Virus record (IMG/VR): IMGVR_UViG_3300017917_001342
Location: 62,001 to 126,000 of that record
DNA: 64,000 nt
Strand: one strand, 5' to 3'
Shown: positions 1,579 through 54,845 of the stretch, piece by piece
Numbering within the stretch: position 1 is the first letter of the stretch
Layout of the letters: the number at the start of each line of letters is the position of its first letter
Position numbers and translations under genes: made by a program
The notes under the pieces: model-generated
The model's database searches: none
The model's input: the letters and a program-made list of their open reading frames with translations, nothing else
What the model was told of the DNA's origin: nothing

Positions 1579-2729
1579 ATGCGTGTAGATGAATTTTTCA
1601 ATCCTATAATAGCGTTGCTGCATGGTAACATGCTGCTTAGCGAAGCCCCTATTGGCACTGCGATAGTAAATCGCAATTGGCGAGAGTATGACCTAGGTGG
1701 GAAACCCGATCGTGATTTTAAACTGTTAGGAAAACTTGGTAGATTTAAGATCGGTGTACAGCCCGAATGGAGTGATTCCATAGACTATGCAGTTGATGTG
1801 TTGATACTTGGTTCTAAAAATACTGTAGTTGGCAAAATCAACATTACTCGAGACGACCGATCGAATAGAAAGATTGCATTTTGGTCTATACACCAATCAA
1901 TACTACACAAAGACCTGCAAGGTCGAGGCATAATGCCTAAAGTCTATGCGTTTTTAGTAAACCACGGCTATAACCTTCGTGCTGACAGTGAACAAAGTGC
2001 AGGTGGACAAAACATCTGGGCTAAGCTAGCAAGGGATCCCAGTGTCAATGTCTATGCTGCATTGTACAATGAAAAAACAGGTGAAACTGAATTTTCTGAT
2101 GTAGATGGTGCTAGACAGCTACAGGCTAATTTTTATCTCTATCAGGATGAAATGGATGAAGAACTCAAATACATTGAGCACGAAATTGATTCGCTACGTG
2201 ATATCAGAGATCGCATCAATGATGATTATTTGGCTTTACCGAAAGATGATGAAGAAGCTGAAAAAAACTAAGTGACGAATACAATAGACTCACTGACCAG
2301 CTAGACAAATTAGACTCTGAATACAGCGAACTGAAATATAAACAGCGCGACGAAGCTCGTAAACAACTCTATCTCTTAGCTATACCCGCAGAACAATCAA
2401 TACCTGTAAATGAAGACGACGACGAAGATGAAGAACTACGTCGCGAAAATCAAAGTGATTTAGAAATGGTGCAAATAGATGGTATGAATATCATGTACCT
2501 ACACAACCCTAGAGAAATCGTACAGCTTGCCGCAGTAAAACAAAATCCCTACGCTATCTATGAAATTGATAATCTAAAATCCAAAACAGTGATATTAACA
2601 GCCATCTTAGGTTTACTAAGACGCGACAGCCTTAGAAATGCAAAACGTCTAACAGTGGAATTTCGTAAGAAATACCCCGATTGGCCAGAATGGGAAACCA
2701 TTACTCGCAGTTTGAAGGCTATACAATAA
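1579..2729 (+). CDS. Putative head-packaged protein: GNAT-like domain, coiled coil, DUF4116-like repeat and C-terminal WPE module; interrupted by a -1 frameshift at 2261-2268
   Basis: ORF 1579-2271 has an LQGRGIMPKVY acetyl-CoA-binding-like motif. The -1 frame is open from 2268 and runs into ORF 2466-2729. Confidence 0.65.
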
Positions 2730-3340
2730 TGCGTATAAATGAAATCAACTCCCACAATTTGAATACTGCAAGTGAAGCCGAGCAATTGGCTGCGGTAAAA
2801 AAGGATGGATATGCAATTCAATGGATACACGATCCCAGTGAGGCAGTGCAATTAGCTGCGGTGCAACAGAATGTACGGGCAATCCAAAACATCAAAAATC
2901 CCAGTGAGAGTGCGCAATTAGCTGCTGTGAATCATAATGTATGGGCAATACAAGGCATCAAAAATCCCAGTGAGAGTGCGCAATTAACTGCGGTGCAACA
3001 GAATGTACTGGCAATCCAATACATCAAAAATCCCAGTGAGAGTGCGCAATTAGCTGCTGTGAATCATAATGGATTGGTAATAAAATTCATAAAAAATCCC
3101 AGTGAGGCAGTGCAATTAGCTGCGGTGCAACAGAATGGCGCAGCAATCTTCCACATACTAACTCTCAATTCCACACAGTTAGATGATGCGGATACCAAAC
3201 GCATCATTATGGTTGCAGTTTTAAAATTGATAAAAAGTAATAAGTTATCTGATGCTAAACTACTTACTGACTATCTATCCGAACACCACGTCGACTGGCC
3301 GGAACTGGCAGTAATAAATCGTAGCTTAAAGGCGATATAG
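2729..3340 (+). CDS. DUF4116-like 22-aa repeat protein with C-terminal WPE module
   Basis: Repeats of NPSE(S/A)(A/V)QLAAV.....AI..IK; start reassigned to MRINE at 2729 (TAATG overlap). Confidence 0.8.
   Translation: MRINEINSHNLNTASEAEQLAAVKKDGYAIQWIHDPSEAVQLAAVQQNVRAIQNIKNPSESAQLAAVNHNVWAIQGIKNPSESAQLTAVQQNVLAIQYIKNPSESAQLAAVNHNGLVIKFIKNPSEAVQLAAVQQNGAAIFHILTLNSTQLDDADTKRIIMVAVLKLIKSNKLSDAKLLTDYLSEHHVDWPELAVINRSLKAI
2833..3135 (+). repeat. Intragenic 66-bp tandem repeat (~4.5 units)
   Basis: TCCCAGTGAG(AGTGC/GCAGT)GCAATTA(G/A)CTGC recurs every 66 bp and encodes the 22-aa repeats. Confidence 0.85.
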
Positions 3341-3342
3341 TA

Positions 3343-3948
3343 ATGCGTATAAACGAGTTAACACCTTATCGCAGAGATCCAAACTACAAAAAGGCTCAGG
3401 AAATATTTGCAGATCCTGAAACTGGATTACCACCTAGACGCAAATCCAAGCTTGCAAAACTAACTGCATGGTTAGATTCGCATGGCTTTAAAGTAGTAGG
3501 ACAAGGTTCGTTCGGTGCTGTATATGAAAAGCCTGGTTACCCTTGGGTATTCAAAGTATTCAACAAAGATCCTGCATACATGCATTTCCTACGTTATGCA
3601 ATGGCACATCAAGGCAACCCACATTTGCCTAAGATACGCGGTGTGATGAAAATAGACAACAACACCTATGTTGTACGTATGGAAAATCTCAAAGAAATAC
3701 CATTGGGATCAGAACCAGCTACTAAGCTGGTAAAGATACTACACAATATGGACAGCTACGGCGACATAGACGAAAAAGATGTAGACTGGATTAAGAAAAC
3801 ACTGCCTGGTATACACAACTTCTTTATGACATTTCCGCTAGGTGGTTACGAATACGATATTCACTATCAGAATCTCATGATGCGCGGCAATACCATAGTA
3901 ATAGTTGATCCACTGTATGATTGGCACGGAATGGAAGGCGACGAATGA
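3343..3948 (+). CDS. Ser/Thr protein kinase, T7 gp0.7-like (copy 1)
   Basis: Glycine loop GQGSFGAVY, VFKV lysine, catalytic DIHYQN, IVDP. Confidence 0.8.
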   Translation: MRINELTPYRRDPNYKKAQEIFADPETGLPPRRKSKLAKLTAWLDSHGFKVVGQGSFGAVYEKPGYPWVFKVFNKDPAYMHFLRYAMAHQGNPHLPKIRGVMKIDNNTYVVRMENLKEIPLGSEPATKLVKILHNMDSYGDIDEKDVDWIKKTLPGIHNFFMTFPLGGYEYDIHYQNLMMRGNTIVIVDPLYDWHGMEGDE

Positions 3949-4580
3949 AACTCAACGACTTATTTGAACGCCATTACCGTACTGTGCCTGCATATCAAAC
4001 TGCTAAGGCTGCGTTTGAACCTGTGACTGATCCAGAGTTAACACCAAATAAACGTAGGCAAGCAGGTGACGCTGCGTTAGCAAAATTCAACAACTACATG
4101 GACGAAAACGGTTTTGAAAAACTAGGGCAAGGTGCATTTGGTGCTGTATATGAAAAGCCTGGTTATCCTTGGGTATTTAAATTGTTTGCCAATGATGCAG
4201 CGTATCTTGCATGGATTAACTACGTTGCCACTCACCAAAACAATGAGCATGTTCCTAAACTCAAAGGCAAACCTTTTAGAATAACTGACGGTGTATTTGC
4301 AGTGCGTATGGAAAAATTGAGTCGCATGCCCGACACTTGGTGGGATGACCCGCTGTTAGATATGACAGTATATGGTGGTATAACCGCAGAGAATAGAAGA
4401 AAATTAAAAGAACTAGGGCATGAAGATCTAGCCGATGTACTAAGTGCAATTCATCAGTTGGCTCACGGTAATCCTAACAATGACTGGAACACTGACATGC
4501 ACGGTGGTAATATACTGATGCGCGGTGATATACCTGTTATTACAGATCCCCTAGTTGATCGCACTACCTTTGGAAAATAG
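3945..4580 (+). CDS. Ser/Thr protein kinase, T7 gp0.7-like (copy 2)
   Basis: GQGAFGAVY, VFKL, DMHGGNIL, VITDP; start reassigned to MKLNDL (ATGA overlap). Confidence 0.82.
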   Translation: MKLNDLFERHYRTVPAYQTAKAAFEPVTDPELTPNKRRQAGDAALAKFNNYMDENGFEKLGQGAFGAVYEKPGYPWVFKLFANDAAYLAWINYVATHQNNEHVPKLKGKPFRITDGVFAVRMEKLSRMPDTWWDDPLLDMTVYGGITAENRRKLKELGHEDLADVLSAIHQLAHGNPNNDWNTDMHGGNILMRGDIPVITDPLVDRTTFGK

Positions 4581-4589
4581 GCATAGACT

Positions 4590-5291
4590 ATGATACTGGA
4601 AGAGTTATTTTTTGTAGAAAATTACATATTAGATGAGATAACTCACTACAGAAACCTACCTGCATATCAAGCAGCTAAAGACGCATTTACTGGTGTAGGT
4701 CGTACTGGTCATTACGATGCTATGAAAAAGTTCAAGCAGTTTATGCAAGACAACGATTTCAAACGTCTAGGAGGCGGTGCATTTGGTGAAGTCTATGAAA
4801 AGGAAGGCTATCCCTGGGTATTCAAAGTATTTCACGGTGATCCTGCATACTTGGATTTTATACGTTATGCAATTGCACATCAAAGCAATCCACATGTACC
4901 AAAAGTCAAAGGACAGCCGTTTCGTATAGATGATAAAACCTATGCTATACGTATAGAAAAGCTACAGCCGTGGAGTGATTATTTCGACGTTAAAAGTGAA
5001 AACGGCACAACACTAATGGATTTTCTGCGTTGGTGGAACCCGCCATTGAAACAGGAACAAATAGAATTTTTGAAACAACGCAATGTCGAAGGATTAGTAG
5101 AAGTGCTTAACGGGCTCGCAGCACTGTGTCGTAGTAAAAATTACAGATTAGATCTACACTACGGTAATGTCATGCGACGAGGCAATACACCAGTTATTGC
5201 AGATCCTCTGGTTGATGACAAGAGTATGGAAAAAAGCAAGCCGCCGATGACTATGCCTGCAAGACCTGGCCGTGCTACTAGATCTGGATAA
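4590..5291 (+). CDS. Ser/Thr protein kinase, T7 gp0.7-like (copy 3)
   Basis: GGGAFGEVY, VFKV, DLHYGNVM, VIADP. Confidence 0.82.
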   Translation: MILEELFFVENYILDEITHYRNLPAYQAAKDAFTGVGRTGHYDAMKKFKQFMQDNDFKRLGGGAFGEVYEKEGYPWVFKVFHGDPAYLDFIRYAIAHQSNPHVPKVKGQPFRIDDKTYAIRIEKLQPWSDYFDVKSENGTTLMDFLRWWNPPLKQEQIEFLKQRNVEGLVEVLNGLAALCRSKNYRLDLHYGNVMRRGNTPVIADPLVDDKSMEKSKPPMTMPARPGRATRSG

Positions 5292-5295
5292 GTTT

Positions 5296-5511
5296 TTATT
5301 TTAAGCCGTGCAGTCTACAGAGGCTTTTATGTCCATCTTCGGCTGCGTCTTGAGACTCGTAAAACGCCAAGGTTTCAGTTCCGTTTTCGCTGGACATCAC
5401 TGTGGTATATTTGCCATGTCTGCTAGTAAACTGTAATTCGTAAGTTGATAAACGTATAGTTTCTAAATTAGATAACCCGCCATCACTCGAAGATATTTGC
5501 CACAGTGCCAT
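5296..5511 (-). CDS. Small hypothetical protein, paralogue of the next gene
   Basis: Shares the I(R/V)(L/V)ST.E ... Y....A..GH.S.C pattern with 5535-5801. Confidence 0.6.
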   Translation of the reverse strand: MALWQISSSDGGLSNLETIRLSTYELQFTSRHGKYTTVMSSENGTETLAFYESQDAAEDGHKSLCRLHGLK

Positions 5512-5534
5512 GTCAGACCTTTCTTAGTACATGC

Positions 5535-5801
5535 TCAGGGATATTTAACACCGTATTCACGACAGATACTAGCATGTCCGGCTGCTGCTTCTGCAACAGT
5601 ATCATAACGTTCTACAACATCACTGTCAGTGACAGTGTAAGTTGCAGCGGTGTCATCAAACTTCAAACCAAACACACAGGTTTCGTAACGGTATCCAAAA
5701 TCAAAATCTTTGATCTTAGGCATTTCAATTGTGCTTACACGAACTGTTGCAGGACGAAGCAGTCCGCCATTGTTAGAATCCAAGTGCCAACGATTATCCA
5801 T
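5535..5801 (-). CDS. Small hypothetical protein
   Basis: ORF track; GAGG RBS; paralogous to 5296-5511. Confidence 0.7.
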   Translation of the reverse strand: MDNRWHLDSNNGGLLRPATVRVSTIEMPKIKDFDFGYRYETCVFGLKFDDTAATYTVTDSDVVERYDTVAEAAAGHASICREYGVKYP

Positions 5802-5815
5802 CTCAGTGTCCTCAG

Positions 5816-6124
5816 TTAGGTGTGTACAACTTCTTTGATACCTGCTGCACGAATTGCACTTTCACAAACCGGGCAGGGTTTCGCATTCTTAGGATTGCCT
5901 TCACTGTCATAACGCATTACAACAATTCTGTGTGCTTTGTCAAGACTGCGACATTTAGCAATGGCGTGAATTTCTGCATGAAGAAAAATCTTGTCGCACA
6001 GCCCTACAGCATCTGCATGTTTCTTTTGCAGCGGATGAGTTTTCACATAGGAATTCTTACCTACGCTGATAATACGACCGCGCTTGTCGTAGATAAATGC
6101 AGTGATTTCAAAACGTTTTTTCAT
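5816..6124 (-). CDS. Zn-dependent cytidine/dCMP deaminase-like protein
   Basis: HAE...PCPVC motif; start reassigned to MKKRF. Confidence 0.8.
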   Translation of the reverse strand: MKKRFEITAFIYDKRGRIISVGKNSYVKTHPLQKKHADAVGLCDKIFLHAEIHAIAKCRSLDKAHRIVVMRYDSEGNPKNAKPCPVCESAIRAAGIKEVVHT

Positions 6125-6184
6125 GTTGCACAATATTGTTGACAGCGTTGCTAATAGCATGTGTGTGCAACGCTGTCAACCAAA

Positions 6185-7381
6185 TTAGTTATCACCCTCA
6201 AAGTGATAGGACCATGCATACCCTCCCCACAGGTGACGCACAGCATCAACTTTGGTTTGAGTATTACAGTTCTTGCGGATAATGTCCAGCAGCATATCCG
6301 AAACCTTACGGCCTTGGAAGCAGCCAAACACAATCTGCGGCGCAACCGGATCATTCTTTTCGATCGTCGGTTTCCATTCAAGTGCATAACGCTTGCGGTC
6401 AAGCCCGCTGGCAACAACAGTGTTGAAGTAGCGTTCGTAGCTATGAACCGATTGGTTAAATCCGCTCCAAAACTCAGCTTCAAACTGTTCAACACGGTGA
6501 CGATCTTCTTCGAGCATGAACGACTTGGTATCGTCAAGTTTTTCGTTGACGATCAAATCGATTACGTTCTTTTCCATCGTGATGTTGTCTTTGGTCTTGT
6601 GGATACGACAGTACCAGTCGCCTTTGACTTTGAGCATTTGCCCATTGTCGAAGCGAATGATCCAACCTTCCATGCCTTCAGTTTCGCGAGTTTCCGCAAT
6701 CAGCATAGCCATGTTAGCAGCAGTGCCTTCATATGCACGGACAATGTCCAAGTCATACTCAGCAGCCACAGCTTGCATGGTTTCATAGCTATCGTAGCTA
6801 CCATTAACATTGTTGCGGATCGCAATCAACACCAACCGATCAGTCGGGTAGTCAATCACAATACGTTGCTTACGGCTGCACCATTCAAATACCATGGTTT
6901 TATCCAGGTCTTGCATTGCTTTAGCAGCACGTTCGTAGTTGACGTGATTAGCTACAAACAGTTCAGCACCCATGCTAACGTCGGTGATGCCCATCTTGGT
7001 ACCCCAACGGATACCAGCAGCAGTGAACACCGGCGTGATCATCGATCCATCCAGCTTTTCAAGAATCACATGCGGCGCAGACCAATCAATTTGATTTTCC
7101 TGCGTTTCATCGCGTTCGTTAACGTTGAAAAACTTGTGCAGTCGACGCGACATCAGTGAGCCATCTTTGTAGAACAGCATCCCGCGGCATTCACGACGAA
7201 TAGCAGCATGCAGGTCGTAAACACCGTCTACAACGACTTGCGGAAAAGTGTCGGGCATGTTAACCATATAGTTAACAACGTAGCCCCAATCACGTTCGGC
7301 AACGATAAATTCGTCGCGACCTTCAATAGCCGGACGCACATCATCAAGATGCTTAATCTTCGGAAATTCATAGTGCAACAT
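6185..7381 (-). CDS. rnlA: RNA ligase, T4 Rnl1 family
   Basis: ECRG, KFFN, motif I EKLDGS, FEW, EGWII, KVK. Confidence 0.88.
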   Translation of the reverse strand: MLHYEFPKIKHLDDVRPAIEGRDEFIVAERDWGYVVNYMVNMPDTFPQVVVDGVYDLHAAIRRECRGMLFYKDGSLMSRRLHKFFNVNERDETQENQIDWSAPHVILEKLDGSMITPVFTAAGIRWGTKMGITDVSMGAELFVANHVNYERAAKAMQDLDKTMVFEWCSRKQRIVIDYPTDRLVLIAIRNNVNGSYDSYETMQAVAAEYDLDIVRAYEGTAANMAMLIAETRETEGMEGWIIRFDNGQMLKVKGDWYCRIHKTKDNITMEKNVIDLIVNEKLDDTKSFMLEEDRHRVEQFEAEFWSGFNQSVHSYERYFNTVVASGLDRKRYALEWKPTIEKNDPVAPQIVFGCFQGRKVSDMLLDIIRKNCNTQTKVDAVRHLWGGYAWSYHFEGDN

Positions 7382-7467
7382 GTTATCGCCTTTCGGTGTC
7401 TGTGTGTATGATTGACAATAGCAGAAACACTGCTACTGTCAACCAAGTTTTTAAGGGGGTTTAGTGA

Positions 7468-7941
7468 TTATCGACCTGATTTACCAGATACTTTAGGAAT
7501 CTTAGACATAACCTTTTTGCAATAACTGCTAGGCTTTTTGCCTACTCTGGCATTGGTCCCGCGGTTATAGAGTGTAGCAGCCTTACAGAAATCACCCTTG
7601 GCAGTGTCAAGAGCTAGTTTAAGGTATTGCATACTCCAGGTTAGGTTTATTTCTGGGTTGAGCAGCGCCGAACACTTACCCTTAAATCCCAGACCCCTAG
7701 CAGTGCCACAACGGATCTGACCCAGACCGTAGTTACCACTACTATATGCTCGCGGATCGAAATTACTTTCGACCGAAACGATAGCGTATGCCAGCGAGAA
7801 TGGCACGTTTTGGTCCTTGGCCTTGTCAGCTAGAAGCTGAACCAGTGTTGACTTGCTATCATCTTTTTCAACACTGGACCCCCACGCCTTGCAGCTAACG
7901 CATGCAAGTAGCAGGGCTACGACCATGATCTTCAACTTCAT
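7468..7941 (-). CDS. Lytic transglycosylase (SLT domain) with N-terminal signal peptide
   Basis: AIVSVES catalytic Glu, GLGQI, LLNPEINL, LYNRG. Confidence 0.85.
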   Translation of the reverse strand: MKLKIMVVALLLACVSCKAWGSSVEKDDSKSTLVQLLADKAKDQNVPFSLAYAIVSVESNFDPRAYSSGNYGLGQIRCGTARGLGFKGKCSALLNPEINLTWSMQYLKLALDTAKGDFCKAATLYNRGTNARVGKKPSSYCKKVMSKIPKVSGKSGR

Positions 7942-8013
7942 GGTAGTCTATTTAACTACCAAACCGCCACCATTGTCAATACAGTTAATTGTGGCTCAAA
8001 CCACAACATATAG

Positions 8014-8520
8014 TCACTTTGCGAATTTAAAGTAGCAATCTACAGCCTCTTGGTACTTCGGTTCCAGGGTTTTATAGTACTCTGGATCCTTGATACCACG
8101 TAGAATTATCCTTATTTCTTCGTCGGTTATGTCAATTTCGCGCAATCTTGCTTCAAACATTTCCATAAACGGATTGGGAACTGCTTTTGCTTTGGCCACA
8201 AAATCTACTCTGATGACATCAGCGGAATCTTGCTTCTTTGACTTTTGATCAGCGTAATACCGCTTCAAATTGGGAATTCTTGGTACAGAATTAGGATCAT
8301 AACCGATTTTTTCAACAAGATTGTTTTGCGGAACTTCTACAGTTTCCACAGTTACAATTTCAGCTTGCACTTCTACAGTTTCAATTGGTTTAGGAAACAG
8401 TATTGAGCCTTTACGTTCAATACGCTTTTCCCATCGTGACAATCGGTCAAGAGCAATTTTGCTGACGTCTGCCAGCAATTGCTTTTCAAATACAAACAAT
8501 GCTTTTGTAAGCCAACCCAT
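8014..8520 (-). CDS. Hypothetical protein
   Basis: ORF track; AGGA RBS. Confidence 0.7.
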   Translation of the reverse strand: MGWLTKALFVFEKQLLADVSKIALDRLSRWEKRIERKGSILFPKPIETVEVQAEIVTVETVEVPQNNLVEKIGYDPNSVPRIPNLKRYYADQKSKKQDSADVIRVDFVAKAKAVPNPFMEMFEARLREIDITDEEIRIILRGIKDPEYYKTLEPKYQEAVDCYFKFAK

Positions 8521-9083: not shown

Positions 9084-9112
9084 AGTTATTTTCCTTGTTA
9101 AATCAGTGCAGG

Positions 9113-9496
9113 TCAGTAAACCCGCACAATGAGGTGTCCGTTGTCAACTTTAACTTCTACTTTGCCGAGTGCAAGCAACGGTCCGTAGAGTTTAGCATTT
9201 TTTTCTGCAAGCGAAACTCGACGAAGTTTGATGCCTGCATCGCTGACTTTCACAGCTTCGAACGGAGTGCGCGAACCAAGACCACGCTTGGTGTAGTAGT
9301 TAGGACGATGCCCAAAAAAGTCTTTGATGATATCGCTCACAGCATTGATACGATCAATATGCGCATCAGTATCAAAAAGCTTGTGGTGTTTTTCGCCTGC
9401 TTCTTCGCTGCGATAGGTTGCATTGAGATACGCACCCAATCCATTACCCATTTTGCGAGTGTTGTTGAGATCTTCTTGAACAAGCTGTGCGGTCAT
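9113..9496 (-). CDS. Hypothetical early protein
   Basis: ORF; start reassigned to MTAQL, downstream of a TTGACA promoter. Confidence 0.7.
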   Translation of the reverse strand: MTAQLVQEDLNNTRKMGNGLGAYLNATYRSEEAGEKHHKLFDTDAHIDRINAVSDIIKDFFGHRPNYYTKRGLGSRTPFEAVKVSDAGIKLRRVSLAEKNAKLYGPLLALGKVEVKVDNGHLIVRVY

Positions 9497-9567
9497 CGGT
9501 TTGATCCTTTTGCAAATGTTAGTGTGATGCATACATAACATGAGTATGCATCACTGTCAAGTCTATA

Positions 9568-9855
9568 TCAGTTGCACCAGTAGCTTTCGCTAGCAACCGA
9601 GCAGTGCCACGGCGTGTTAACGGATTCTTCAACCAGTTCGCCAGTAAGAGCGTGACGAACCATGTGCGTACCAGCAATCAACATGCTGTACATCTTGTTG
9701 TCTTGCACAGCAAGTTGGTCTTCGGCAATGTTCTTTTTACGGCAAATACGAGTCTTTGCTGCTTTTGCAGCAGCTTCGGTAGCATAGTACTGCTTACCAT
9801 AAGCACGTTCGGTAACAATTGCAGTAGTGTTGACATTGTAAACCACGTAAGCCAT
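9568..9855 (-). CDS. Hypothetical early protein
   Basis: AAGGAG RBS before MAYVVY; TTGACA-N14-TGCTATGT promoter upstream. Confidence 0.75.
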   Translation of the reverse strand: MAYVVYNVNTTAIVTERAYGKQYYATEAAAKAAKTRICRKKNIAEDQLAVQDNKMYSMLIAGTHMVRHALTGELVEESVNTPWHCSVASESYWCN

Positions 9856-9927
9856 GTTGTGCGCTCCTTGCTGCGTTATGTTTATATACATAGCATAGGC
9901 ACAGGCAGTGTCAACCAAAATTTTTGG

Positions 9928-10269
9928 TTAACTTACAGATTCTGTAAAAATAATATGGCTGTCGTATTTGTCTAAAAATCTACTATAATCTTCAACATTA
10001 TCAAAGTAATAGATCACTCGATCGTTGTATGCCATACTGCTGGTAAATCTCACTGCTATGTCACCAATGAGATTGCGTTCACACCATCGACGTATTTCAA
10101 ACATTGTGTTGTGAGTAAACCATTCTGTTTGTGTGTCCATAGATGCAGCATGTGGCCACATGCGATTGGGCCACGGTGGATCCCGCTGATCATACTTTAA
10201 TAGATCAGCGGGCATAATCCACAACACTGTGTTTGGATCTAGACTATCTAAATCAATCCAACGTGCCAT
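9928..10269 (-). CDS. Small hypothetical protein (W..N..G...F...D...F family)
   Basis: ORF track; pattern shared with neighbours. Confidence 0.7.
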   Translation of the reverse strand: MARWIDLDSLDPNTVLWIMPADLLKYDQRDPPWPNRMWPHAASMDTQTEWFTHNTMFEIRRWCERNLIGDIAVRFTSSMAYNDRVIYYFDNVEDYSRFLDKYDSHIIFTESVS

Positions 10270-10271
10270 TA

Positions 10272-10589
10272 TTACATAGGACCGTCATATTCATATTCAT
10301 TTGGTAATGGTACATTATGACACAAACTAAACAATAGTGCATCAGATTTGTCATACAGTTCTATGTATAGGAATTCTCCGTTTCTTAAAGAGAACATAAA
10401 ACTGTCAGTGTCCCATCTACCTGTGCAGTTATCAACTAGCCATTTATACATTGTTGATTGTGTATAGTTTTTATTATCACATTCGCATTCTATCAGCCAT
10501 TTACTTGTATCAGTAATATCGAATGTACCATCTGACCGCACATCGGCGGGTTGGTAGAAGAATTGTTTAATTCTCAAGTTATTATCCAT
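10272..10589 (-). CDS. Small hypothetical protein (same family)
   Basis: WLVDNCTGRW...DALLFSL. Confidence 0.7.
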   Translation of the reverse strand: MDNNLRIKQFFYQPADVRSDGTFDITDTSKWLIECECDNKNYTQSTMYKWLVDNCTGRWDTDSFMFSLRNGEFLYIELYDKSDALLFSLCHNVPLPNEYEYDGPM

Positions 10590-10908
10590 GTGTTAAAATG
10601 TAATATAGTTTTACTTCTTCAAAATCTTCGTACTTTTTAAAAAACACTTCGTAGTCTTTTGAACTGCATAGCCAACTGGTAAATTTTTCAGGTTCTTTTT
10701 CGTGTTGATACCATTCAAGTGTATATTTGTAAGAACCTTTACCAAGCAACATCTCACAGGATTTTACAAAGCTATAATAACGACCTTTTGGTACAGTTAA
10801 GCGAAATTGATAGCCTCGACCAAATGCAGGATTGCGTTGGTTAATTCTACAGAATGTACCAAATTGGTACCGAGTATTTCGATATGCAATGTTGCTAGGT
10901 TGCATCAA
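10582..10908 (-). CDS. Small hypothetical protein
   Basis: ORF track; overlapping start and stop codons. Confidence 0.65.
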   Translation of the reverse strand: MMQPSNIAYRNTRYQFGTFCRINQRNPAFGRGYQFRLTVPKGRYYSFVKSCEMLLGKGSYKYTLEWYQHEKEPEKFTSWLCSSKDYEVFFKKYEDFEEVKLYYILTHG

Positions 10909-11411
10909 ATAGTAACTGATTGTGTTAAAGCAAAATTCAATGCTTTTTTATGATTGTCTATTAGTACTTCACATTTTCCGGAACCAATTGGCAATATTTC
11001 CCAACCATTGCCCATGTATGCATTAACTTGTTCGTCGAGTTCTATTTCTCGGCCTACATTTTTCTTTAACCATTTGATTGAATTAATGAGGTCGCTTGAA
11101 TTGATCACTATTCGTTTAGCATTGCTCCATTTTTTCTTAAATTTTGTGTAGTCTAGTTCTTTAAGAAAAATAAAGCTGAATATCTCATAAAAACAATATT
11201 CTTTTTCTGTAGAATCAGTGTCACTGGATTTAGAGATCTCATCTTCCCAAAGTAAAAAGCATTTGTCAGCTTTAAGCTTTTTTGTAATATAATCTCTATG
11301 ATTTTTATATCGTTTATAATGTTTTTTGTTAGGCCACTCTTTGTTGTATTCAGCAACAGCATTTTCAATATATTTTTGAATTAATTCCGGGTGTGCATAA
11401 AAATTGCTCAT
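10905..11411 (-). CDS. Hypothetical protein (same family)
   Basis: WLKKNVG...ALNFAL; ATGA overlap with the DNA ligase gene. Confidence 0.65.
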   Translation of the reverse strand: MSNFYAHPELIQKYIENAVAEYNKEWPNKKHYKRYKNHRDYITKKLKADKCFLLWEDEISKSSDTDSTEKEYCFYEIFSFIFLKELDYTKFKKKWSNAKRIVINSSDLINSIKWLKKNVGREIELDEQVNAYMGNGWEILPIGSGKCEVLIDNHKKALNFALTQSVTI

Positions 11412-12754
11412 TCATCATCTTTCTTTTTGTCGTTACGGAAGCCCATGAATGTAGGAAATCTCACGCTCCATACATCATCGCTATCTTGATTCTTAGTCAG
11501 CGCATCGCCTTTGATTTCAACAATGCGGCCAATAACTGCGTTGCGATTACGCCAAATTTCATCACGCAGCTCTTCACTAAAGCCACTGCCTACACTGACT
11601 TCAATCAGCTTGTCTTGATCAACTCCGCGGCACACAAGGTTACCAAGTGTATGCTTGAAGCGGCTGTCTTCTTTACCAGGTTCAACACCAATCACTTCGA
11701 GATCAACTGTGATAAAAGGCTTCATCTTAAGCCATGCATCGGTGCGCTTAGTACGATAGGTAGCAGCAGGGTCTTTGATCATAATGCCTTCGTAGCCAGC
11801 AGCAACAGTTTCGTTGTTAAACTGTTTGAACTCTGCTTGACCTTCCGGTGTGTCAAGGTCAATGGCTTTTTTAGGAATCACATAAACACGTTCACCGCAG
11901 TGTTCTTTCAGCAGTGGCATGAAACCAACCAGCACATCTTGTCGATCTCTCTGTGACATTTTGCATTCGCCTGCAAGAAAGTCAACCAATGGCACAATAT
12001 CAAACAGCGCCAGTTTGGCATCGCTAGTGTCAACGTTTTCTTTGCGGTTTAGCTGCTTCATTAGATCTTGGAAATTGCGGCTAACCATTTCTCCATCAAG
12101 CACAATGCTCTGCTTGAGGTGCGGAATCAGTTTGGCAAGATCGCTGGAAATCTTATCAAAGCGATCGTTCTGCCGACCATCACGGCTGTATTGCGTAACA
12201 GTTTTGTTGTCGATGTTAACAATGCTGATAATACGAACACCGTCAAGCTTGGGATCGAGATATTTCCAACCTTTCATCTTCTTAGGATGATCATCTGCGT
12301 TCTTAGCAAGTTGGCAGCTAAACACAGGAATAATATAGTCTTCAGTGCCTTCAAGGCTTTCAAGCACTTTGTTAACAGTGCTTTCGGTAATGCCACACTT
12401 GAGATCTTTAAGCAATATGCGACGATACCACCCGTTCCACTCGTCAGTACTTGACACATTTGCAGCATCGCGCAGTGCGTCACGAGCAGCATTGCCTGTG
12501 AGTTCACGTAGTCGCAAACGTTCAAGCAGTGCAGTAAACTTTTCCCAGTTCATACCGCTTACAAAGCCTGGCATGTCAGGATCTTCAATCTGAGGCGCTT
12601 TCTTAACACCAAAGGTAACCATAGCATCATATGCTAGCTTGGCACCTGCAAAAAATTCTACACAACCCTGCTCCCAGGCATTGCGAATGATACGTTCTTT
12701 ATCCAAACGCCCGCTGGTGGATTCAAGCTGGGCAATGACTTCGTAGGGTTTCAT
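11408..12754 (-). CDS. lig: ATP-dependent DNA ligase
   Basis: KLDGVR adenylation motif, LDGEM, EGIMIK, WLKMK, OB-fold GSGFS...RFPTF. Confidence 0.93.
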   Translation of the reverse strand: MKPYEVIAQLESTSGRLDKERIIRNAWEQGCVEFFAGAKLAYDAMVTFGVKKAPQIEDPDMPGFVSGMNWEKFTALLERLRLRELTGNAARDALRDAANVSSTDEWNGWYRRILLKDLKCGITESTVNKVLESLEGTEDYIIPVFSCQLAKNADDHPKKMKGWKYLDPKLDGVRIISIVNIDNKTVTQYSRDGRQNDRFDKISSDLAKLIPHLKQSIVLDGEMVSRNFQDLMKQLNRKENVDTSDAKLALFDIVPLVDFLAGECKMSQRDRQDVLVGFMPLLKEHCGERVYVIPKKAIDLDTPEGQAEFKQFNNETVAAGYEGIMIKDPAATYRTKRTDAWLKMKPFITVDLEVIGVEPGKEDSRFKHTLGNLVCRGVDQDKLIEVSVGSGFSEELRDEIWRNRNAVIGRIVEIKGDALTKNQDSDDVWSVRFPTFMGFRNDKKKDDE

Positions 12755-12822
12755 GTGATGTCTCAACAGTGTTGGTTACTGTTGAGTTATAGCATGCAGA
12801 TCAATGTCTGTCAATACTGTGT

Positions 12823-13644
12823 TTATTTCTCTATCGGCTGTGCTGCTAAGCTGCGTTCAAATGCAGACAGTTCAGGCCAATTTGCACTGTGCTTGCGCAA
12901 GTGATCAAGTATTCTGGTAACATGGTACACTGCATTTATCTTCATACGTTCTAACATGTATTTGATAATGTAAGGCTTAACTTCTGGATTGTTTAGAATG
13001 GTTGGGTTTTCAATGTAGGTTATGGTTGCAGGATTATCTTTAATAACTGCCCATTGTACAGATTCTGTAGGATTTACTATATGTTGTATACTATATGGAT
13101 CACGGTTAACTGCGGTCATTTGCAGTGTTTCATCAGGATCATCTATATAGCGTATATAATCTGGATCACTCTTTATAGCTTTGAGTTTGGTTTCGTAATC
13201 CATCTTGCCCAAATAATCAAACCAAGCAGCTTCTGCTTGCCCACTGAGATAGTAGCTGCCATAGGTTACATAGACTTCATTACCAGTATATCTGATAAAA
13301 TCTGTAACAGTGGAACGCCGTACATCACCTATATCAAATGGTGCAAACAGTTCTGTAAACAATGGGATTAATGCTGCATCTAAACCTTTAAGTTTATTAT
13401 CAGACGCAATTATACCTGTATCACCTGTGCTAAAGTAAACACGTATAATACCAGTAGCTACATCAAATTCCACTCGCACTACTAGTAGAGTGTTGCCGTT
13501 ATGTAGTTTTACTTTGTAGTTGAGATGATCAAAATACGCAACAGGTCCATTTTCTGACGGAGTAACTAATTCTATCCATTCAGGAGTTGAATCTGAGTTA
13601 TTCATTGATTCTATGAGTTTTATATGATGTCTGATATCTTGCAT
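12823..13644 (-). CDS. Putative head protein with DUF4116-like repeats and C-terminal WPE module
   Basis: Repeats DPDETLQMTAV / NPTESVQWAVI; C-terminus NWPELSAFERSL; ATAAATA late promoter upstream. Confidence 0.75.
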   Translation of the reverse strand: MQDIRHHIKLIESMNNSDSTPEWIELVTPSENGPVAYFDHLNYKVKLHNGNTLLVVRVEFDVATGIIRVYFSTGDTGIIASDNKLKGLDAALIPLFTELFAPFDIGDVRRSTVTDFIRYTGNEVYVTYGSYYLSGQAEAAWFDYLGKMDYETKLKAIKSDPDYIRYIDDPDETLQMTAVNRDPYSIQHIVNPTESVQWAVIKDNPATITYIENPTILNNPEVKPYIIKYMLERMKINAVYHVTRILDHLRKHSANWPELSAFERSLAAQPIEK

Positions 13645-13830
13645 GTGATATTTATTAGTTCGGCGTAAGCCGAACTGCGCCTTTCGTTTATTTCGTTTCG
13701 CAGGCTACACTCATAAACTCAATCGCTGGATTAATATTCTATGATCTTTTATATTTCGCTAGATTCTGTGCTCACAAGACGACAGTGTTGCCGTCTTGTA
13801 AAAAAAGGTCCAACATTTCGCTGAGTTCCT

Positions 13831-14185
13831 TAGCTTGTCCAACTGATCGCAACCTGGTTACAGGAAAGGGGCTGTCATGATTTCCTCCCTTTTACGTTGA
13901 TTTCTGCCCATCTCGTTCAATAGCCTTCGGACTAACAATACCATTGAATGTCATAGATGTAGGGTTACCGTCTACTACCCTAAGTGTCATGTAAAATGAC
14001 TTCGACCGTTGATTGCTTATTCTGATATGCAAAGCTTTTTATTTCAGTCATGAGACTACGGAACCGGAACGCCGGAAGCTACACATCCACCATCAGTGGG
14101 TAGTGCATACCAGTCATGCTGCCGCCCATGTGCATCCCTCCCTGTCCGAAGGTGAGCAGTCCTAGTCGATCGCTTGGACAAGCTA
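13831..14185. ncRNA. Candidate large structured ncRNA (~355 nt)
   Basis: Lies in a ~600-bp gene-free gap; closed by a perfect 12-bp inverted repeat TAGCTTGTCCAA/TTGGACAAGCTA; many internal hairpins. Confidence 0.5.
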
Positions 14186-14206
14186 TCGGCAGTGTTCGTA
14201 CATAGT

Positions 14207-14234
14207 AAAAAAGGGCAAGTAAACTTGCCCTTTT
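14207..14234. terminator. Intrinsic terminator
   Basis: AAAAAAGGGCAAGT-AA-ACTTGCCCTTTT hairpin with U-tracts on both strands. Confidence 0.8.
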
Positions 14235-14239
14235 GATGG

Positions 14240-15007
14240 TTATGGTTGCCAGCCAGGCGGCGGCGTTGCACCGCTAGTATAAGCAGGGAATGCACTGTTT
14301 GATGTGCTAGCTGTATATCTGCTCTTTAACACAATGCCTCTACGTTGTAGGTTTTTGCTACTGTCGTAGTATATTGCCATAATAGCATTTGGTATACTGT
14401 GATTTTCGCGTACAAACTGTGTTGGCACTGTATTCCATTGTGTTGCTTGTCCGAAACCTGTGCCAACATTTTGAGATACTGCATTTGTTACTGCTATGTT
14501 GTTTAAACTAGCACTAGATGCAACACCACTTGATATGCTCAGTCCTCGCAGTGCATTTGGATTATATCCACTGCTATGAGGATCTGCTGCATAGGTGTAG
14601 GTGGTATAAACAGGCTGTTGCCATTCTTTAAACACCATAGCACCTATTACACCAGTGTTGCTGACATTGCCACCTATTTTAGCCACATAGCTTTTGTCAC
14701 TGCGACTAAAGTAAAACTCCGCAGCAGTTTGGTTATCTAGCTTCCAACCTGGTATGTCAAGTGTGCTGTTGCCATTTACAACATAGCCTTCACTGAGATG
14801 TCCAGCAGGTTTGCCTTTTAAAACATCTAAGCCGTCTACGCTGAAGATTGCCAGTACTCTGTTAGGACTTCGGTTGGTAAAGCGGATAGTGTAATTACTA
14901 CCCTCTCTACCTTCTATCCAGACCTGACCTTGATGATAGTATTCATCTGCAGGTCTACGTCCTAGTGGGCAGATCTCCAGCTGATATTGTGCGCTGGGAT
15001 CGTACAT
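14240..15007 (-). CDS. Conserved hypothetical protein coupled to the vWA gene
   Basis: Y.IR..N....RV....SVDGLDV...GY......I.GW motif; 1 bp from the vWA gene. Confidence 0.75.
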   Translation of the reverse strand: MYDPSAQYQLEICPLGRRPADEYYHQGQVWIEGREGSNYTIRFTNRSPNRVLAIFSVDGLDVLKGKPAGHLSEGYVVNGNSTLDIPGWKLDNQTAAEFYFSRSDKSYVAKIGGNVSNTGVIGAMVFKEWQQPVYTTYTYAADPHSSGYNPNALRGLSISSGVASSASLNNIAVTNAVSQNVGTGFGQATQWNTVPTQFVRENHSIPNAIMAIYYDSSKNLQRRGIVLKSRYTASTSNSAFPAYTSGATPPPGWQP

Positions 15008-15008
15008 C

Positions 15009-15767
15009 TCACTTTACCTTTGCACGTTCTTCGTCTGTGAAGCTAGCACTGGCGTAGACAGCTTGGGTATCCATACCAGCCATTTTAGCACTGCGCATAC
15101 GAACAGTAGTTGCACTAAGCACATCCATGGTCTGAGCCATGTTAGCTGTGCTGTAGTTAACACTGTTAGACACGTTCATACCAAAACTTGCACCTACAGA
15201 GAACGCATCAATGTTTGCACCTAGGAATACAAAACTCCAGTCTGCTTTTTCAGCAGCAGCAACCATAGCTTTGATCTGCTCGTTGTTGTATTTGCGGCTG
15301 GAATTTTCCTCACCGTCGGTCATAATCAACACGATTACACCCGGACGATCTTTCTTCTTAGACTTCTCAAGAGTAGTGTTAACTTGCTCAATTGTATAAC
15401 CAATGCAGTCAAGTAGGTTGGTACCACCATTGGGTGTGTAGTTGGTTTTGTCAAGTGCAGGTACTTCTGCAAGTGGACGATCAGCAAATACAGTTTTGAT
15501 CTGAGGTGCATCAAACTTGTTCAGCGTAAGCACAGCATCGCCTGCATCTTTTGCAGCACGCTGGCCTTGTACGAATTCATTGAATCCACTGATAGTCTGT
15601 TCCCAGCAGCTATTCATACTGCCGCTTTCGTCTAGTACAACTGCGATAAGGTTACCGTTGGTACCAGCTTTTTTAAATTTGTATTTGGGAGTTGTAGTTG
15701 CAACTGTGGTTGTTACAGTTGTCTGTGCGAGGCCGAGGCCAGGAAACGGATTGGGTAGTGTAGCCAT
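15009..15767 (-). CDS. von Willebrand factor A domain protein
   Basis: MIDAS motif DESGS, GGTNLLD, MTDGEEN, FLGAN. Confidence 0.88.
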   Translation of the reverse strand: MATLPNPFPGLGLAQTTVTTTVATTTPKYKFKKAGTNGNLIAVVLDESGSMNSCWEQTISGFNEFVQGQRAAKDAGDAVLTLNKFDAPQIKTVFADRPLAEVPALDKTNYTPNGGTNLLDCIGYTIEQVNTTLEKSKKKDRPGVIVLIMTDGEENSSRKYNNEQIKAMVAAAEKADWSFVFLGANIDAFSVGASFGMNVSNSVNYSTANMAQTMDVLSATTVRMRSAKMAGMDTQAVYASASFTDEERAKVK

Positions 15768-15883
15768 TGTTTTCTCCTTTAGGGTCTTAACTGCCTAGAA
15801 TCACCTCTAGGTCTTTACCGCCCTATTACTGCACCCTGTGTGCATTAAAACTATTTATAGTGCCTAAAAGCGCAAAACTCAAA

Positions 15884-16201
15884 TCATCCTTGTTCTTTTT
15901 TAATCTGCTGTATACTATTTCTTATAGTATCAATTTCTGGCCAGGCTACACCTAATTCGCTAACTTGCCACGCTAATGCATCTGCTAGATAGAAAGCTTC
16001 TCGTTTAAAGTATGTTAAAATCATACGTATAATTTGCGTTTTATGTGGATCTAACAGTTCTGCATGGTTACCTCGATAACCAATATCTAACAGTTCTAAC
16101 AGAGCAACCCTCACGCCACCCATGTTATCATCGTCAAGAAATTCTTTGAGATATTTCAAATGATTCTTTGGATTGCGTTCTTCAGTGAGTTTGTATGTCA
16201 T
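15884..16201 (-). CDS. Small protein consisting mostly of the WPE module
   Basis: KTQIIRMIL...AWPEIDTIRNSI; ATGA overlap start. Confidence 0.7.
   Translation of the reverse strand: MTYKLTEERNPKNHLKYLKEFLDDDNMGGVRVALLELLDIGYRGNHAELLDPHKTQIIRMILTYFKREAFYLADALAWQVSELGVAWPEIDTIRNSIQQIKKEQG

Positions 16202-52415: not shown

Positions 52416-54845
<2,430 letters not shown>

What the first reader, a model, noticed from the sequence alone, without database searches (positions are those of the whole stretch)
2600..16201. Shared ~50-aa C-terminal WPE module on four dispersed proteins
Seen in sequence: the ORFs ending at 2729 (DWPEWETITRSL), 3340 (DWPELAVINRSL), 12823 (NWPELSAFERSL) and 15884 (AWPEIDTIRNSI) share the pattern K..I+..+L..+(K/R)...WPE+..+..S+ at the extreme C-terminus, although their N-terminal regions are unrelated. 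Three carry DUF4116-like repeats just before it. Inference: a portable sorting or docking tag, for example for capsid loading or ordered ejection.
Basis: partly seen in the sequence, partly recalled or inferred. Interest (0 to 1): 0.62.

Follow-up and report, generated by a model that had tools for sequence, protein, structure and literature searches.

The report
Repeated WPE helical domain, huge phage
The shared "WPE" tail on four proteins is real: it is an undescribed 50-residue three-helix domain, present 41 times in this 518-kb phage and in hundreds of metagenomic proteins, and its internal copies are followed by a sequence that matches the cutting site of the phage's head-maturation protease, which suggests (not proves) that these proteins are loaded into the capsid.

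Summary
The four ORFs end in a homologous ~50-aa module with consensus K..I.K..L...K…G..WPEL..I.(R/K)S. A profile finds 41 copies in 16 proteins of this 518,643-bp T4-related phage genome. Nine adjacent genes at genome 203-221 kb carry 1-6 copies each, internal as well as C-terminal. The profile also matches 673 protein clusters in metagenomes, with up to 16 copies per protein. Pfam, PHROGs, NCBIfam and PDB sequences do not cover it. AlphaFold2 gives a confident three-helix, TPR-like bundle with no specific structural relative. It occurs without DUF4116 repeats, so it is not their cap.

New finding: 93.5% of canonical internal copies are followed within 20 residues by [LIVM]-x-E and then usually a small or polar residue. 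Only 8% of C-terminal copies have this. It matches the L/I-x-E specificity of T4 gp21. The genome encodes a gp21 homologue and a gp23-type capsid protein whose L-F-E|S aligns with T4's L-T-E65|A. The sites fall in low-confidence linkers and are invariant in orthologues.

Best reading: these are head-internal proteins and polyproteins cut so that each product ends in a WPE module. This rests on sequence and models only; what the module binds is unknown.

The parts
1579..2729 (+). Carrier 1. Two ORFs (1579-2271 and the -1 frame open from 2262 to 2729) correspond to one 379-400-aa gene in relatives. Its order is unknown N-terminal domain, coiled coil, acidic linker, one DUF4116-like repeat, WPE module.
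   Evidence: Searches show the translations and the junction. Searches show that relative P0184 (383 aa, 97% identical) reads ...EEAEKKLSDEY... straight across the junction. One search shows contigs of three other studies with one extra A at this place.
2261..2267 (+). A7 run that splits carrier 1. A_AAA_AAC (2262-2268) is a textbook -1 slippery heptamer in the frame of ORF 1579-2271. Relatives have A8.
   Evidence: Run X1, probably the source sample, also shows A7.
2577..2726 (+). WPE module of carrier 1 (...KYPDWPEWETITRSLKAIQ*).
   Evidence: E = 3.4e-13.
2729..3340 (+). Carrier 2 (203 aa from the ATG at 2729, which overlaps the preceding stop as TAATG). It starts MRINE, then has about five DUF4116-like repeats (2732-3157), then the WPE module.
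3191..3337 (+). WPE module of carrier 2 (...VDWPELAVINRSLKAI*).
   Evidence: E = 1.9e-15.
12823..13644 (-). Carrier 3 (273 aa). It has an N-terminal peptide ending L10-I11-E12|S (13609-13617), an unknown domain, DUF4116-like repeats (12997-13218) and the WPE module.
   Evidence: One search shows L-x-E|(S/T) in the 7 of 8 aligned sequences (the window protein and six orthologues) that include this N-terminus.
12838..12984 (-). WPE module of carrier 3 (...ANWPELSAFERSLAAQPIEK*).
   Evidence: E = 2.2e-17.
15884..16219 (-). Carrier 4 (111 aa, or 105 aa if it starts at the ATG at 16201). It is a small all-helical protein with no DUF4116 repeat. KLTE|E lies near the N-terminus and the WPE module at the C-terminus.
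   Evidence: Searches found no Pfam or PHROG family. In one search the Atlas record starts at residue 7 and the fold is TPR-like.
15902..16063 (-). WPE module of carrier 4 (...VAWPEIDTIRNSIQQIKKEQG*).
   Evidence: E = 3.7e-19. It is the first row of alignment A1, folded.

Best explanation
The WPE module is an autonomous, previously undescribed ~50-residue three-helix (TPR-like) domain. It marks a large paralogous family of proteins in a clade of uncultured, T4-related ~500-kb freshwater phages. The family's proteins are most likely head-internal proteins, meaning prohead-core or ejection cargo. Single-module members carry a payload (DUF4116-like repeats, enzyme-like or unknown domains) followed by one C-terminal module. 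They often also have a short N-terminal peptide ending in [LIV]-x-E, like the T4 capsid targeting sequence. Multi-module members are polyproteins. After each canonical internal module, an exposed linker carries [LIVM]-x-E followed by a small or polar residue, which is the specificity of the T4 gp21-type prohead protease that this genome encodes. Cutting there would release units of about 110-170 residues that each end in 'module plus about 8 residues', the same C-terminal layout as the single-module proteins.

Shown here: homology of the copies, copy number and spread; autonomy of the predicted fold; position-specific enrichment, conservation and predicted exposure of the site; presence of the protease and of the homologous site in the capsid protein.

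Inferred: that the sites are cut, and that the proteins are therefore inside proheads.

More speculative: that the constant module is the common 'handle' by which the variable payloads dock to a shared partner (prohead core, inner capsid wall or ejection path), or are retained after cleavage.
For: The family is real. There are 41 copies in 16 proteins. The profile matches 673 clusters at E <= 1e-3 and 126 at E <= 1e-30 among 1.84 billion representatives, with up to 16 matched stretches per protein.

The domain looks autonomous. AlphaFold2 on the 41-copy alignment gives pLDDT 96.5 and three helices. The domain occurs without DUF4116 repeats.

The C-terminal position is conserved. In 117 of the 150 best proteins the last copy ends within 15 residues of the C-terminus.

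The junction motif is strong and specific:
- [LI]-x-E lies 11-31 residues after the W in 72% of 591 internal copies, against 24% in composition-matched shuffles (z = 31). [LI]-x-D, [SAG]-x-E and [KR]-x-E are depleted.
- The baseline in windows away from modules is 19%.
- 419 of 448 canonical internal copies have [LIVM]-x-E, against 10 of 123 terminal tails.
- The next residue is S/A/D/N/T/G in about 80% of cases (S 25%, A 18%, D 13%, N 11%, T 7%, G 7%), and no other position is conserved.
- The distance from W to that E has median 21; the distance from W to the natural C-terminus has median 19.
- In 11 orthologues (43-100% identity) the two site glutamates, E148 and E260, are invariant while the linkers carry indels.
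- AlphaFold2 of that 393-aa protein gives pTM 0.38. Its pLDDT<50 segments include 144-150, 253-263 and 374-393, which contain the three sites; the other two (1-5, 21-24) are N-terminal.

The enzyme and a reference substrate are present. Peptidase_S77 scores 88.8 bits and is 34% identical to T4 gp21, including the LGE.xHP and GVSSRG motifs. The Gp23 capsid protein scores 310 bits. Its L47-F-E49|S aligns with T4 L-T-E65|A, and L and E are invariant in T4, Phosso and PA5oct. The T4 specificity L/I-X-E, and the rule that cleaved proteins are head proteins, come from PMC9026906 and PMC5694885.

N-terminal [LIV]-x-E within 15 residues occurs in 45% of family members against 19% of all genes of this genome (p = 3e-10). 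It is conserved in orthologues of carriers 1 and 3.
Against: There is no proteomic or biochemical evidence, because the phage is known only from metagenomes. The protease specificity is inferred from 34% identity to gp21 and from one aligned capsid site. The carrier genes lie among nucleic-acid-enzyme genes (RNA ligase, DNA ligase), far from the head gene cluster at genome 404-409 kb. Only one carrier sits downstream of a TATAAATA late-promoter-like motif. The closest cultured relatives by capsid protein (Phosso, PA5oct, GAP32) lack the module, so no virion proteome can be borrowed. A short [LIVM]-x-E motif could instead be a conserved linker or helix-capping element. If the N-terminal peptides are the targeting signal, the module need not be a sorting tag at all. 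The modules are on average uncharged and their fold is generic, so nothing points to a particular partner. About one in five of the best 150 family proteins does not end in a module, for example the nucleotidyltransferase protein at genome 205695-207914.
Confidence: 0.45

Rival explanations
1. The module is a generic TPR-like protein-protein interaction unit of cytoplasmic, non-virion phage proteins, for example host-takeover scaffolds. On this reading the [LIVM]-x-E element after it is only a conserved linker or helix-start feature and is never cut.
For: The fold resembles TPR units only at background level. The genes lie among replication and repair genes rather than head genes. There is no proteomic evidence. 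The co-folding attempt gave no verdict, which counts neither way.
Against: The motif is missing from terminal copies (8% against 93.5%), so it is not part of the domain. It strictly needs E, not D, with an aliphatic residue two positions before. It sits in low-confidence linkers with indels around invariant glutamates. It matches the specificity of a protease that the genome encodes.
Confidence: 0.25
2. The multi-module proteins are themselves building blocks of an enlarged prohead core or scaffold. The modules would self-associate to build the core, and the protease would then chop the arrays so that the acidic pieces leave the head. On this reading the module is an assembly unit, not a cargo tag.
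For: These are arrays with protease-type sites after every unit, as in T4 gp22, gp67 and gp68, which are cut into many fragments. The proteins are net acidic, about -2 per 100 residues with median pI 5.7. A very large capsid needs a large core.
Against: Single-module members carry enzyme-like or repeat payloads, which look like cargo. A conventional gp22-like coiled-coil scaffold gene already sits between the protease and capsid genes. Cultured relatives with ~470-kb genomes manage without the family.
Confidence: 0.15
3. The module is a small nucleic-acid-binding tri-helical domain of the HTH or Myb kind.
For: It has three helices in about 50 residues, occurs in tandem, and has a conserved W and a basic residue plus S in the last helix.
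Against: Mean net charge of the modules is about 0. No HTH or Myb family or structure appears in the Pfam, PDB-sequence or fold searches, and the top structural rows are TPR-like hairpins.
Confidence: 0.05
4. The module is only the C-terminal capping element of the DUF4116-type repeat solenoid.
For: In 4 of the 16 carriers the module directly follows DUF4116-like repeats. DUF4116 is also the commonest co-occurring Pfam family in relatives, in 6 of 60 scanned.
Against: Twelve of the 16 carriers, and 54 of the 60 relatives scanned, have the module without DUF4116. The module repeats up to 16 times on its own. It is predicted to fold alone with pLDDT 96.5.
Confidence: 0.03

Closest known systems
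T4 internal proteins (IPI-III, Alt) with the N-terminal capsid targeting sequence, processed by the gp21 prohead protease
   Same: Both are diverse payload proteins of a T4-type phage. Both have short N-terminal peptides ending in L/I-x-E. Both have cleavage sites of gp21 type, and the genome has a gp21 homologue and a gp23-type capsid protein with the homologous L-x-E site.
   Different: The T4 signal is a 10-20-residue N-terminal peptide that is removed. Here the shared element is a folded 50-residue domain that would stay at the C-terminus of every product, and many members are multi-unit polyproteins. No sequence similarity to T4 IPs was seen. Cleavage and head location are not shown.
Paralogous inner-body and ejection protein families of phiKZ-like giant phages (phiKZ, 201phi2-1, SPN3US)
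   Same: Both are expanded paralogue families of head-internal proteins in giant phages, cut C-terminal to glutamate at short motifs, with redundant sites (PMC5694885 and PMC9026906).
   Different: Those proteases prefer S/A/G-x-E, which is depleted here (z = -7.6). This phage is a T4/gp23-type lineage nearest to Phosso and PA5oct by capsid protein. No homology to those families was found.
C-terminal helix-turn-helix coat-binding domain of the P22 scaffolding protein (recalled from general knowledge, not tested here)
   Same: It is a small helical domain at the extreme C-terminus that docks a protein to the inside of the procapsid, and it can carry foreign cargo when fused.
   Different: It is a two-helix basic element in one scaffold protein, not a three-helix repeat family. 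No sequence or structure comparison was made here. This is an analogy only.
TPR and other alpha-hairpin repeats
   Same: The model superposes on about 1.5 TPR units (Z 7-8, rmsd 1.6-3.7 A over 49-56 residues). Atlas neighbours of carrier 4 are TPR proteins.
   Different: No TPR Pfam family matches even at E <= 1. The Z-scores are at the background level stated for helical models. The units are separated by linkers rather than stacked, judging from pTM 0.38.
Pfam DUF4116 repeats
   Same: They co-occur in 4 of the 16 carriers and 6 of 60 relatives.
   Different: DUF4116 and PHROG repeat matches stop before the module, for example at residue 159-178 of the 219-aa carrier 2. The module has its own consensus and length.

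Membership tests
Pfam DUF4116 (for the module itself) | A match to PF13475 that covers the segment | tested here: not met
   DUF4116 matches lie at residues 1-36 (carrier 1 fragment), 36-69 (carrier 2) and 149-168 (carrier 3), all upstream of the module. Carrier 4 has no match at E <= 1.
Pfam DUF4116 (for the repeats in front of the module) | A score over the gathering cut-off of 24.9 bits | tested here: inconclusive
   carrier 2 scores 28.9 bits (met); carriers 1 and 3 score 21.8 and 18.8 bits (below). PHROG repeat families phrog_5925 and phrog_17056 match carriers 2 and 3 strongly.
TPR repeat superfamily | A sequence match to a TPR family model | tested here: not met
   no TPR family among the Pfam hits of any carrier.
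TPR repeat superfamily | Structural similarity clearly above background | tested here: inconclusive
   no Foldseek hit at E <= 0.001; the best VIA Z is 8.1, within the stated background for helical models.
Substrates of T4-type (S77) prohead protease | An L/I-x-E motif at an accessible position | tested here: met
   the motif follows 93.5% of canonical internal modules, its glutamates are invariant in orthologues, and it lies in segments with pLDDT < 50.
Substrates of T4-type (S77) prohead protease | The same genome encodes the protease | tested here: met
   PF03420 scores 88.8 bits, over its cut-off; 34% identity to T4 gp21.
Substrates of T4-type (S77) prohead protease | Actual cleavage, and presence in proheads or virions | not testable with these tools
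   The phage is uncultured, no proteome is held, and no RNA run is on record.
T4 capsid-targeting-sequence (CTS) proteins | An N-terminal propeptide of 10-20 residues ending in L/I-x-E | tested here: inconclusive
   All four window carriers have [LIV]-x-E within residues 3-13, conserved in orthologues, and the family is enriched for this (45% against 19%). However, several of the peptides are only 5 residues long (MRINE, MRVDE) and none resembles the T4 CTS sequence.
T4-type (gp23/gp21) head morphogenesis, for the genome | A Gp23-family major capsid protein with an L-x-E site homologous to T4 E65 | tested here: met
   310 bits. L47 and E49 are invariant and aligned with T4 L-T-E65.

The most novel reading that the evidence does not exclude
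Huge T4-related phages use a dedicated folded domain, the WPE module, as a universal handle for capsid cargo. Arrays of 'payload plus handle' units would be made as polyproteins, loaded into the prohead, and cut apart by the prohead protease into many separate effector or structural units, each with a free C-terminal handle. That would be a modular cargo-cassette system without precedent in T4 or the phiKZ-like phages. The handle would dock to one conserved head or ejection component, and so could be used to load foreign proteins.
Probability: 0.25. Interest if true: 0.75.

Novelty: new variant of a known kind. Interest (0 to 1): 0.6.

Why it matters
How giant phages choose, load and release the many proteins they pack beside their DNA is poorly understood outside T4 and the phiKZ group. 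This family gives a sequence-defined and very abundant candidate set of head-internal proteins for ~500-kb uncultured phages: 41 domains in one genome and 673 clusters in metagenomes. It also gives a simple, testable rule, namely module, then linker, then [LIVM]-x-E cut. If confirmed, it would be a new Pfam-scale domain family. It would add the first polyprotein arrays to the substrates of the T4-type prohead protease. It could also provide a portable handle for packaging foreign proteins into large capsids. If it is not confirmed, it remains a new and widespread phage repeat domain of unknown role.

Tried and rejected
- Pfam, PHROGs and NCBIfam scans of carriers and multi-module proteins found no family covering the module. 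One Pfam call failed on a coordinate error and was not repeated.
- A profile search against PDB sequences gave only chance-level rows, E >= 0.25.
- Foldseek against PDB and VIA-align wide gave only generic TPR-like similarity at background level. The ESM Atlas gave the same.
- tblastn of a 6-module protein and of a 16-module protein against 50,697 phage records found no match. megablast of window 2000-8000 found none.
- The profile search of the genomes of Phosso, PA5oct and GAP32 found no match, while the positive control on the own genome gave 41 matches. The 493-kb ENA contig could not be searched because it is not held.
- The search for related loci failed with the module alignment because no stretch was conserved enough. 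With carrier 3 it found no relatives in viral contigs.
- Complex prediction of capsid protein plus gp22-like scaffold plus the module of carrier 4 scored 0.00 and gave no verdict. It is not evidence either way.
- The basic DNA-binding idea was dropped because the modules are uncharged on average.
- The WPE tripeptide itself as a cleavage site was rejected: W is not an aliphatic residue at the position two before the cut, and the motif sits at the start of helix 3 in a confidently folded bundle.
- The NCLDV (giant eukaryotic virus) origin suggested by DUF4116 and a neighbouring contig's gene content was rejected: there is no NCLDV capsid match (though the control genomes did not ring either), whereas Gp23, S77 and a weak tail-sheath match are present.
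- The exact T4 late-promoter motif TATAAATA stands upstream of only one carrier operon, so expression timing remains open.
- No alternative genetic code was needed.

Full report
**Context.** The window is bases 62,001-126,000 of a single 518,643-bp contig with 40.7% G+C. It is an IMG/VR virus record with direct terminal repeats, and CheckV rates it 100% complete. The genome is a T4-related contractile-tailed phage:
- a Gp23-family major capsid protein scores 310 bits;
- a Peptidase_S77 (T4 gp21-type) prohead protease scores 88.8 bits and is 34% identical to T4 gp21;
- a gp22-like coiled-coil gene lies between those two;
- there is a weak tail-sheath match;
- the window itself holds T4-type RNA ligase 1, an ATP-dependent DNA ligase and a collagen-like tail fibre.

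By capsid protein, the nearest cultured phages are Sinorhizobium phage Phosso (469 kb, 77% identity), Pseudomonas phage PA5oct and Cronobacter phage GAP32. Near-identical or related DNA occurs in pond, freshwater, aquatic, aquaculture and rhizosphere metagenomes of 12 studies.

**Check of the observation.** A profile seeded from the genome's own copies and iterated to convergence finds 41 copies in 16 ORFs. An independent search with alignment A1 returns the same 41 places, E = 8e-21 to 2e-9, with the four window copies at 3e-13 to 4e-19. The consensus is ..L...K..I.K..L...K(variable loop and helix 2)L...G..WPEL..I..S, and K9, W42, P43 and E44 are at least 90% conserved. The N-terminal globular parts of the four carriers are unrelated; only the DUF4116-like repeats of carriers 2 and 3 match each other.
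- Seven carriers have one C-terminal copy: genome 64.3, 64.7, 74.8, 77.9, 198.9, 199.4 and 338.5 kb.
- Nine consecutive plus-strand genes at genome 203,330-221,437 carry 1-6 copies each, internal as well as terminal.

**Carrier 1 is a split gene.**
- ORF 1579-2271 ends ...GCT GAA AAA AAC TAA. The -1 frame is open from 2262 through to 2729, although its first ATG is only at 2466.
- Relatives encode one protein of 379-400 aa. P0184 (97% identical) reads ...EEAEKKLSDEY... across the junction.
- Contigs of three other studies carry one more A at this run. The probable source sample has A7, like the window.
- So in this genome the gene carries a 1-nt shorter A-run. Whether that is an error, a mutation, or is bypassed on the textbook slippery heptamer A_AAA_AAC is open.

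**What the module is.**
- Pfam, PHROGs and NCBIfam do not cover it. Matches to DUF4116 and to PHROG repeat families stop before it, and carrier 4 and the multi-module proteins have no family at all.
- PDB sequences give nothing.
- AlphaFold2 on the 41-copy alignment predicts a three-helix bundle (helices 2-21, 25-37 and 43-55) with mean pLDDT 96.5. WPE lies at the loop and start of helix 3.
- Foldseek finds no PDB match at E <= 0.001. The exhaustive structural search tops out at Z 8.1 on TPR-like hairpins, which the tool itself rates as background for helical models. The Atlas neighbours of carrier 4 are TPR proteins too.
- The fold is thus a generic alpha-hairpin unit and says nothing about function.
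- The domain occurs alone in carrier 4 and the 338.5-kb protein, and in arrays without DUF4116. It is therefore not a capping helix of the DUF4116 solenoid.

**Spread.**
- The profile matches 673 representative proteins at E <= 1e-3 among 1.84 billion (309 at <= 1e-10, 126 at <= 1e-30), with up to 16 matched stretches in one protein.
- All those looked up are unnamed metagenomic proteins (JGI, ENA, Logan). They include genes on contigs of 493 kb and 513 kb.
- None was found in 50,697 deposited phage genomes by tblastn.
- The profile finds none in Phosso, PA5oct or GAP32, while the positive control rings 41 times.
- Among 60 relatives, the only co-occurring Pfam families are DUF4116 (6) and DUF5661 (3).
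- In the 150 best proteins the median is 5 copies, and in 117 the last copy ends within 15 residues of the C-terminus.

**The new observation: a protease-type site after every internal module.** Anchoring on the W gives these figures.
- 72% of 591 internal copies have [LI]-x-E 11-31 residues downstream, against 24% in shuffles of the same windows (z = 31). [LIVM]-x-E occurs in 86% against 33%. [LI]-x-D, [SAG]-x-E, [KR]-x-E and [NQST]-x-E are all depleted.
- In 20-residue windows of the same proteins away from modules, the rate is 19%.
- Among canonical internal copies (S or A at W+9), 419 of 448 (93.5%) have the motif.
- The logo shows only L/I/V two positions before the cut, E just before it, and S/A/D/N/T/G just after it (about 80% together: S 25%, A 18%, D 13%, N 11%, T 7%, G 7%). 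There is a mild lysine preference upstream.
- Terminal copies lack it (10 of 123), so it belongs to the junction and not to the domain.
- The distance from W to that glutamate has median 21 and interquartile range 19-23. The distance from W to the natural C-terminus of terminal copies has median 19 and interquartile range 17-24.
- Cutting there would give pieces of median 141 residues.
- In this genome, nearly every canonical internal copy is followed by LPE|S, ISE|S, IDE|N, LDE|N, LDE|S, LDE|G, VNE|A, VEE|S, LNE|S and the like.
- In 11 orthologues of the 393-aa four-module protein (43-100% identity), the site glutamates E148 and E260 are invariant while the surrounding linkers vary and carry indels.
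- AlphaFold2 of that protein gives well-formed helical units but pTM 0.38. Its low-confidence segments (pLDDT < 50) are 1-5, 21-24, 144-150, 253-263 and 374-393. The last three contain the three predicted sites.

**Why this points to the head.**
- T4 gp21 cuts its substrates C-terminal to glutamate after the short motif L/I-X-E, first seen as a Glu-Ala bond. In T4 and the giant phages, proteins cut this way are head proteins (PMC9026906; PMC5694885).
- This genome's protease keeps the gp21 motifs LGE.xHP and GVSSRG.
- Its capsid protein has G-I-L-F-E49|S-A-T-P-G aligned with T4 G-S-F-L-T-E65|A-E-I-G-G. L and E are invariant in T4, Phosso and PA5oct. That the T4 cut is after residue 65 is my recollection, consistent with the count in the aligned sequence.
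- The phiKZ-type preference for S/A/G two positions before the cut is depleted here.
- Family members are also enriched for a short N-terminal peptide ending in [LIV]-x-E: 45% against 19% of all genes of this genome, p = 3e-10. Examples are MRVDE (carrier 1), MRINE (carrier 2)...KLIE|S (carrier 3) and ...KLTE|E (carrier 4). The carrier 3 peptide is present in the 7 of 8 aligned sequences that include the N-terminus, and the carrier 1 peptide in its three printed orthologues. This recalls the T4 capsid targeting sequence, although several of the peptides are only five residues long.

**Interpretation.** I commit to the following, at about 0.45. The WPE proteins are head-internal proteins of a clade of uncultured T4-related huge phages. 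Multi-module members are polyproteins cut by the prohead protease after each module, so that every product, like every single-module protein, ends in a WPE module with a short tail. The sequence statistics, the conservation, the predicted exposure, and the presence of the enzyme and of a homologous reference site are shown. Cleavage and head location are inferred.

The role of the module itself is the weakest step. It is the constant part next to variable payloads, which suits a docking or retention handle for a shared partner. Against that, it is uncharged, its fold is generic, the N-terminal peptides could be the real sorting signal, and my one co-folding attempt gave no verdict (not evidence either way).

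**Rivals.** These are a cytoplasmic interaction repeat whose linker motif is never cut (0.25), self-assembling core or scaffold units that are degraded and expelled (0.15), a nucleic-acid-binding tri-helical domain (0.05) and a DUF4116 cap (0.03).

**Weaknesses.**
- The carrier genes sit among replication and repair genes, far from the head cluster.
- Only the 338.5-kb carrier lies in an operon behind an exact TATAAATA motif.
- No RNA run or proteome exists.
- Cultured relatives lack the family, so nothing can be transferred from their virion proteomes.

**Novelty.** The domain family is undescribed in the libraries searched. The concept of head proteins marked for and cut by a gp21-type protease is known. 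The variant is new: a folded C-terminal domain repeated in polyprotein arrays with a site after each unit. I rate it a new variant of a known kind, with interest 0.6.

Noticed in passing
window 2261-2267 (within 1579-2729, + strand): An A7 run splits a gene that is intact (379-400 aa) in relatives. Contigs of three other studies have A8 here. A_AAA_AAC is a textbook -1 slippery heptamer in the upstream frame, so this is a sequencing error, a real 1-nt deletion or a programmed frameshift.
   Followed up: partly
window 3343-3948 (+): The 201-aa ORF directly after carrier 2 starts MRINEL, like carrier 2's MRINEI. It has a glycine-loop-like GQGSFGAVY...VFKVF stretch that recalls protein kinases. 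No Pfam, PHROG or NCBIfam family matched.
   Followed up: partly
whole genome G000; in the window at 1579 and 3343: Eleven of 642 crude gene calls start M-[KR]-[ILVFM]-x-E (MKINE, MRVDE, MRINE, MRLSE, MKITE and so on). Four of them are WPE carriers and one is a direct neighbour. Fifteen of the 150 metagenomic family members start the same way. This may be a very short cleavable N-terminal signal.
   Followed up: partly
G000 whole genome, e.g. 338119 (+), 404988 (-), 361227 (-): TATAAATA, the T4 late-promoter core, occurs only 26 times against about 60 expected. Fourteen of those lie within 60 nt upstream of a same-strand gene. One heads the two-gene operon that ends with the WPE gene at 338521-338847.
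   Followed up: partly
window 2783-3140 (+): The DUF4116-like repeat block of carrier 2 breaks public assemblies into pieces of 36-140 nt. Related strains show joints that skip or replace repeat units, which suggests that repeat number varies between strains (tables 5 and 8).
   Followed up: no
G000 408261-409343 (-), outside the window: A 360-aa hyper-acidic ORF with DAEMDMDD-type repeats lies directly upstream of the prohead protease. That is the position of the T4 core proteins gp67 and gp68.
   Followed up: no
L001 12695-14914 and 10378-12693 (G000 205695-207914 and 203378-205693): One WPE protein carries a Pol-beta-type nucleotidyltransferase domain (PF18765 33.9 bits, PF01909 31.4 bits). 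Another has a weak GNAT match (E = 0.007). If the family is head cargo, these are candidate injected enzymes.
   Followed up: partly
window 6185-7381 (-), 11408-12766 (-), 15009-15767 (-), 52416-54869 (-): These ORFs are a T4 RNA ligase 1 homologue, an ATP-dependent DNA ligase, a VWA-domain protein and a collagen-repeat tail-fibre-like protein.
   Followed up: partly
window, about 29,550-30,980 (-): A 477-aa open frame contains ...IRLTGGEPLMSKDCW..., which looks like a radical-SAM-type motif. I saw it only in a pattern listing and did not scan it.
   Followed up: no
L005, L006, L007 (JGI and ENA contigs carrying relative P0012): A 10-module relative lies beside an FtsH-like AAA protease that has a faint LAGLIDADG hit, a papain-like peptidase, a carbamoyltransferase, a non-specific endonuclease and a SprT-like gene. 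This is an unusual gene set for a phage contig.
   Followed up: no
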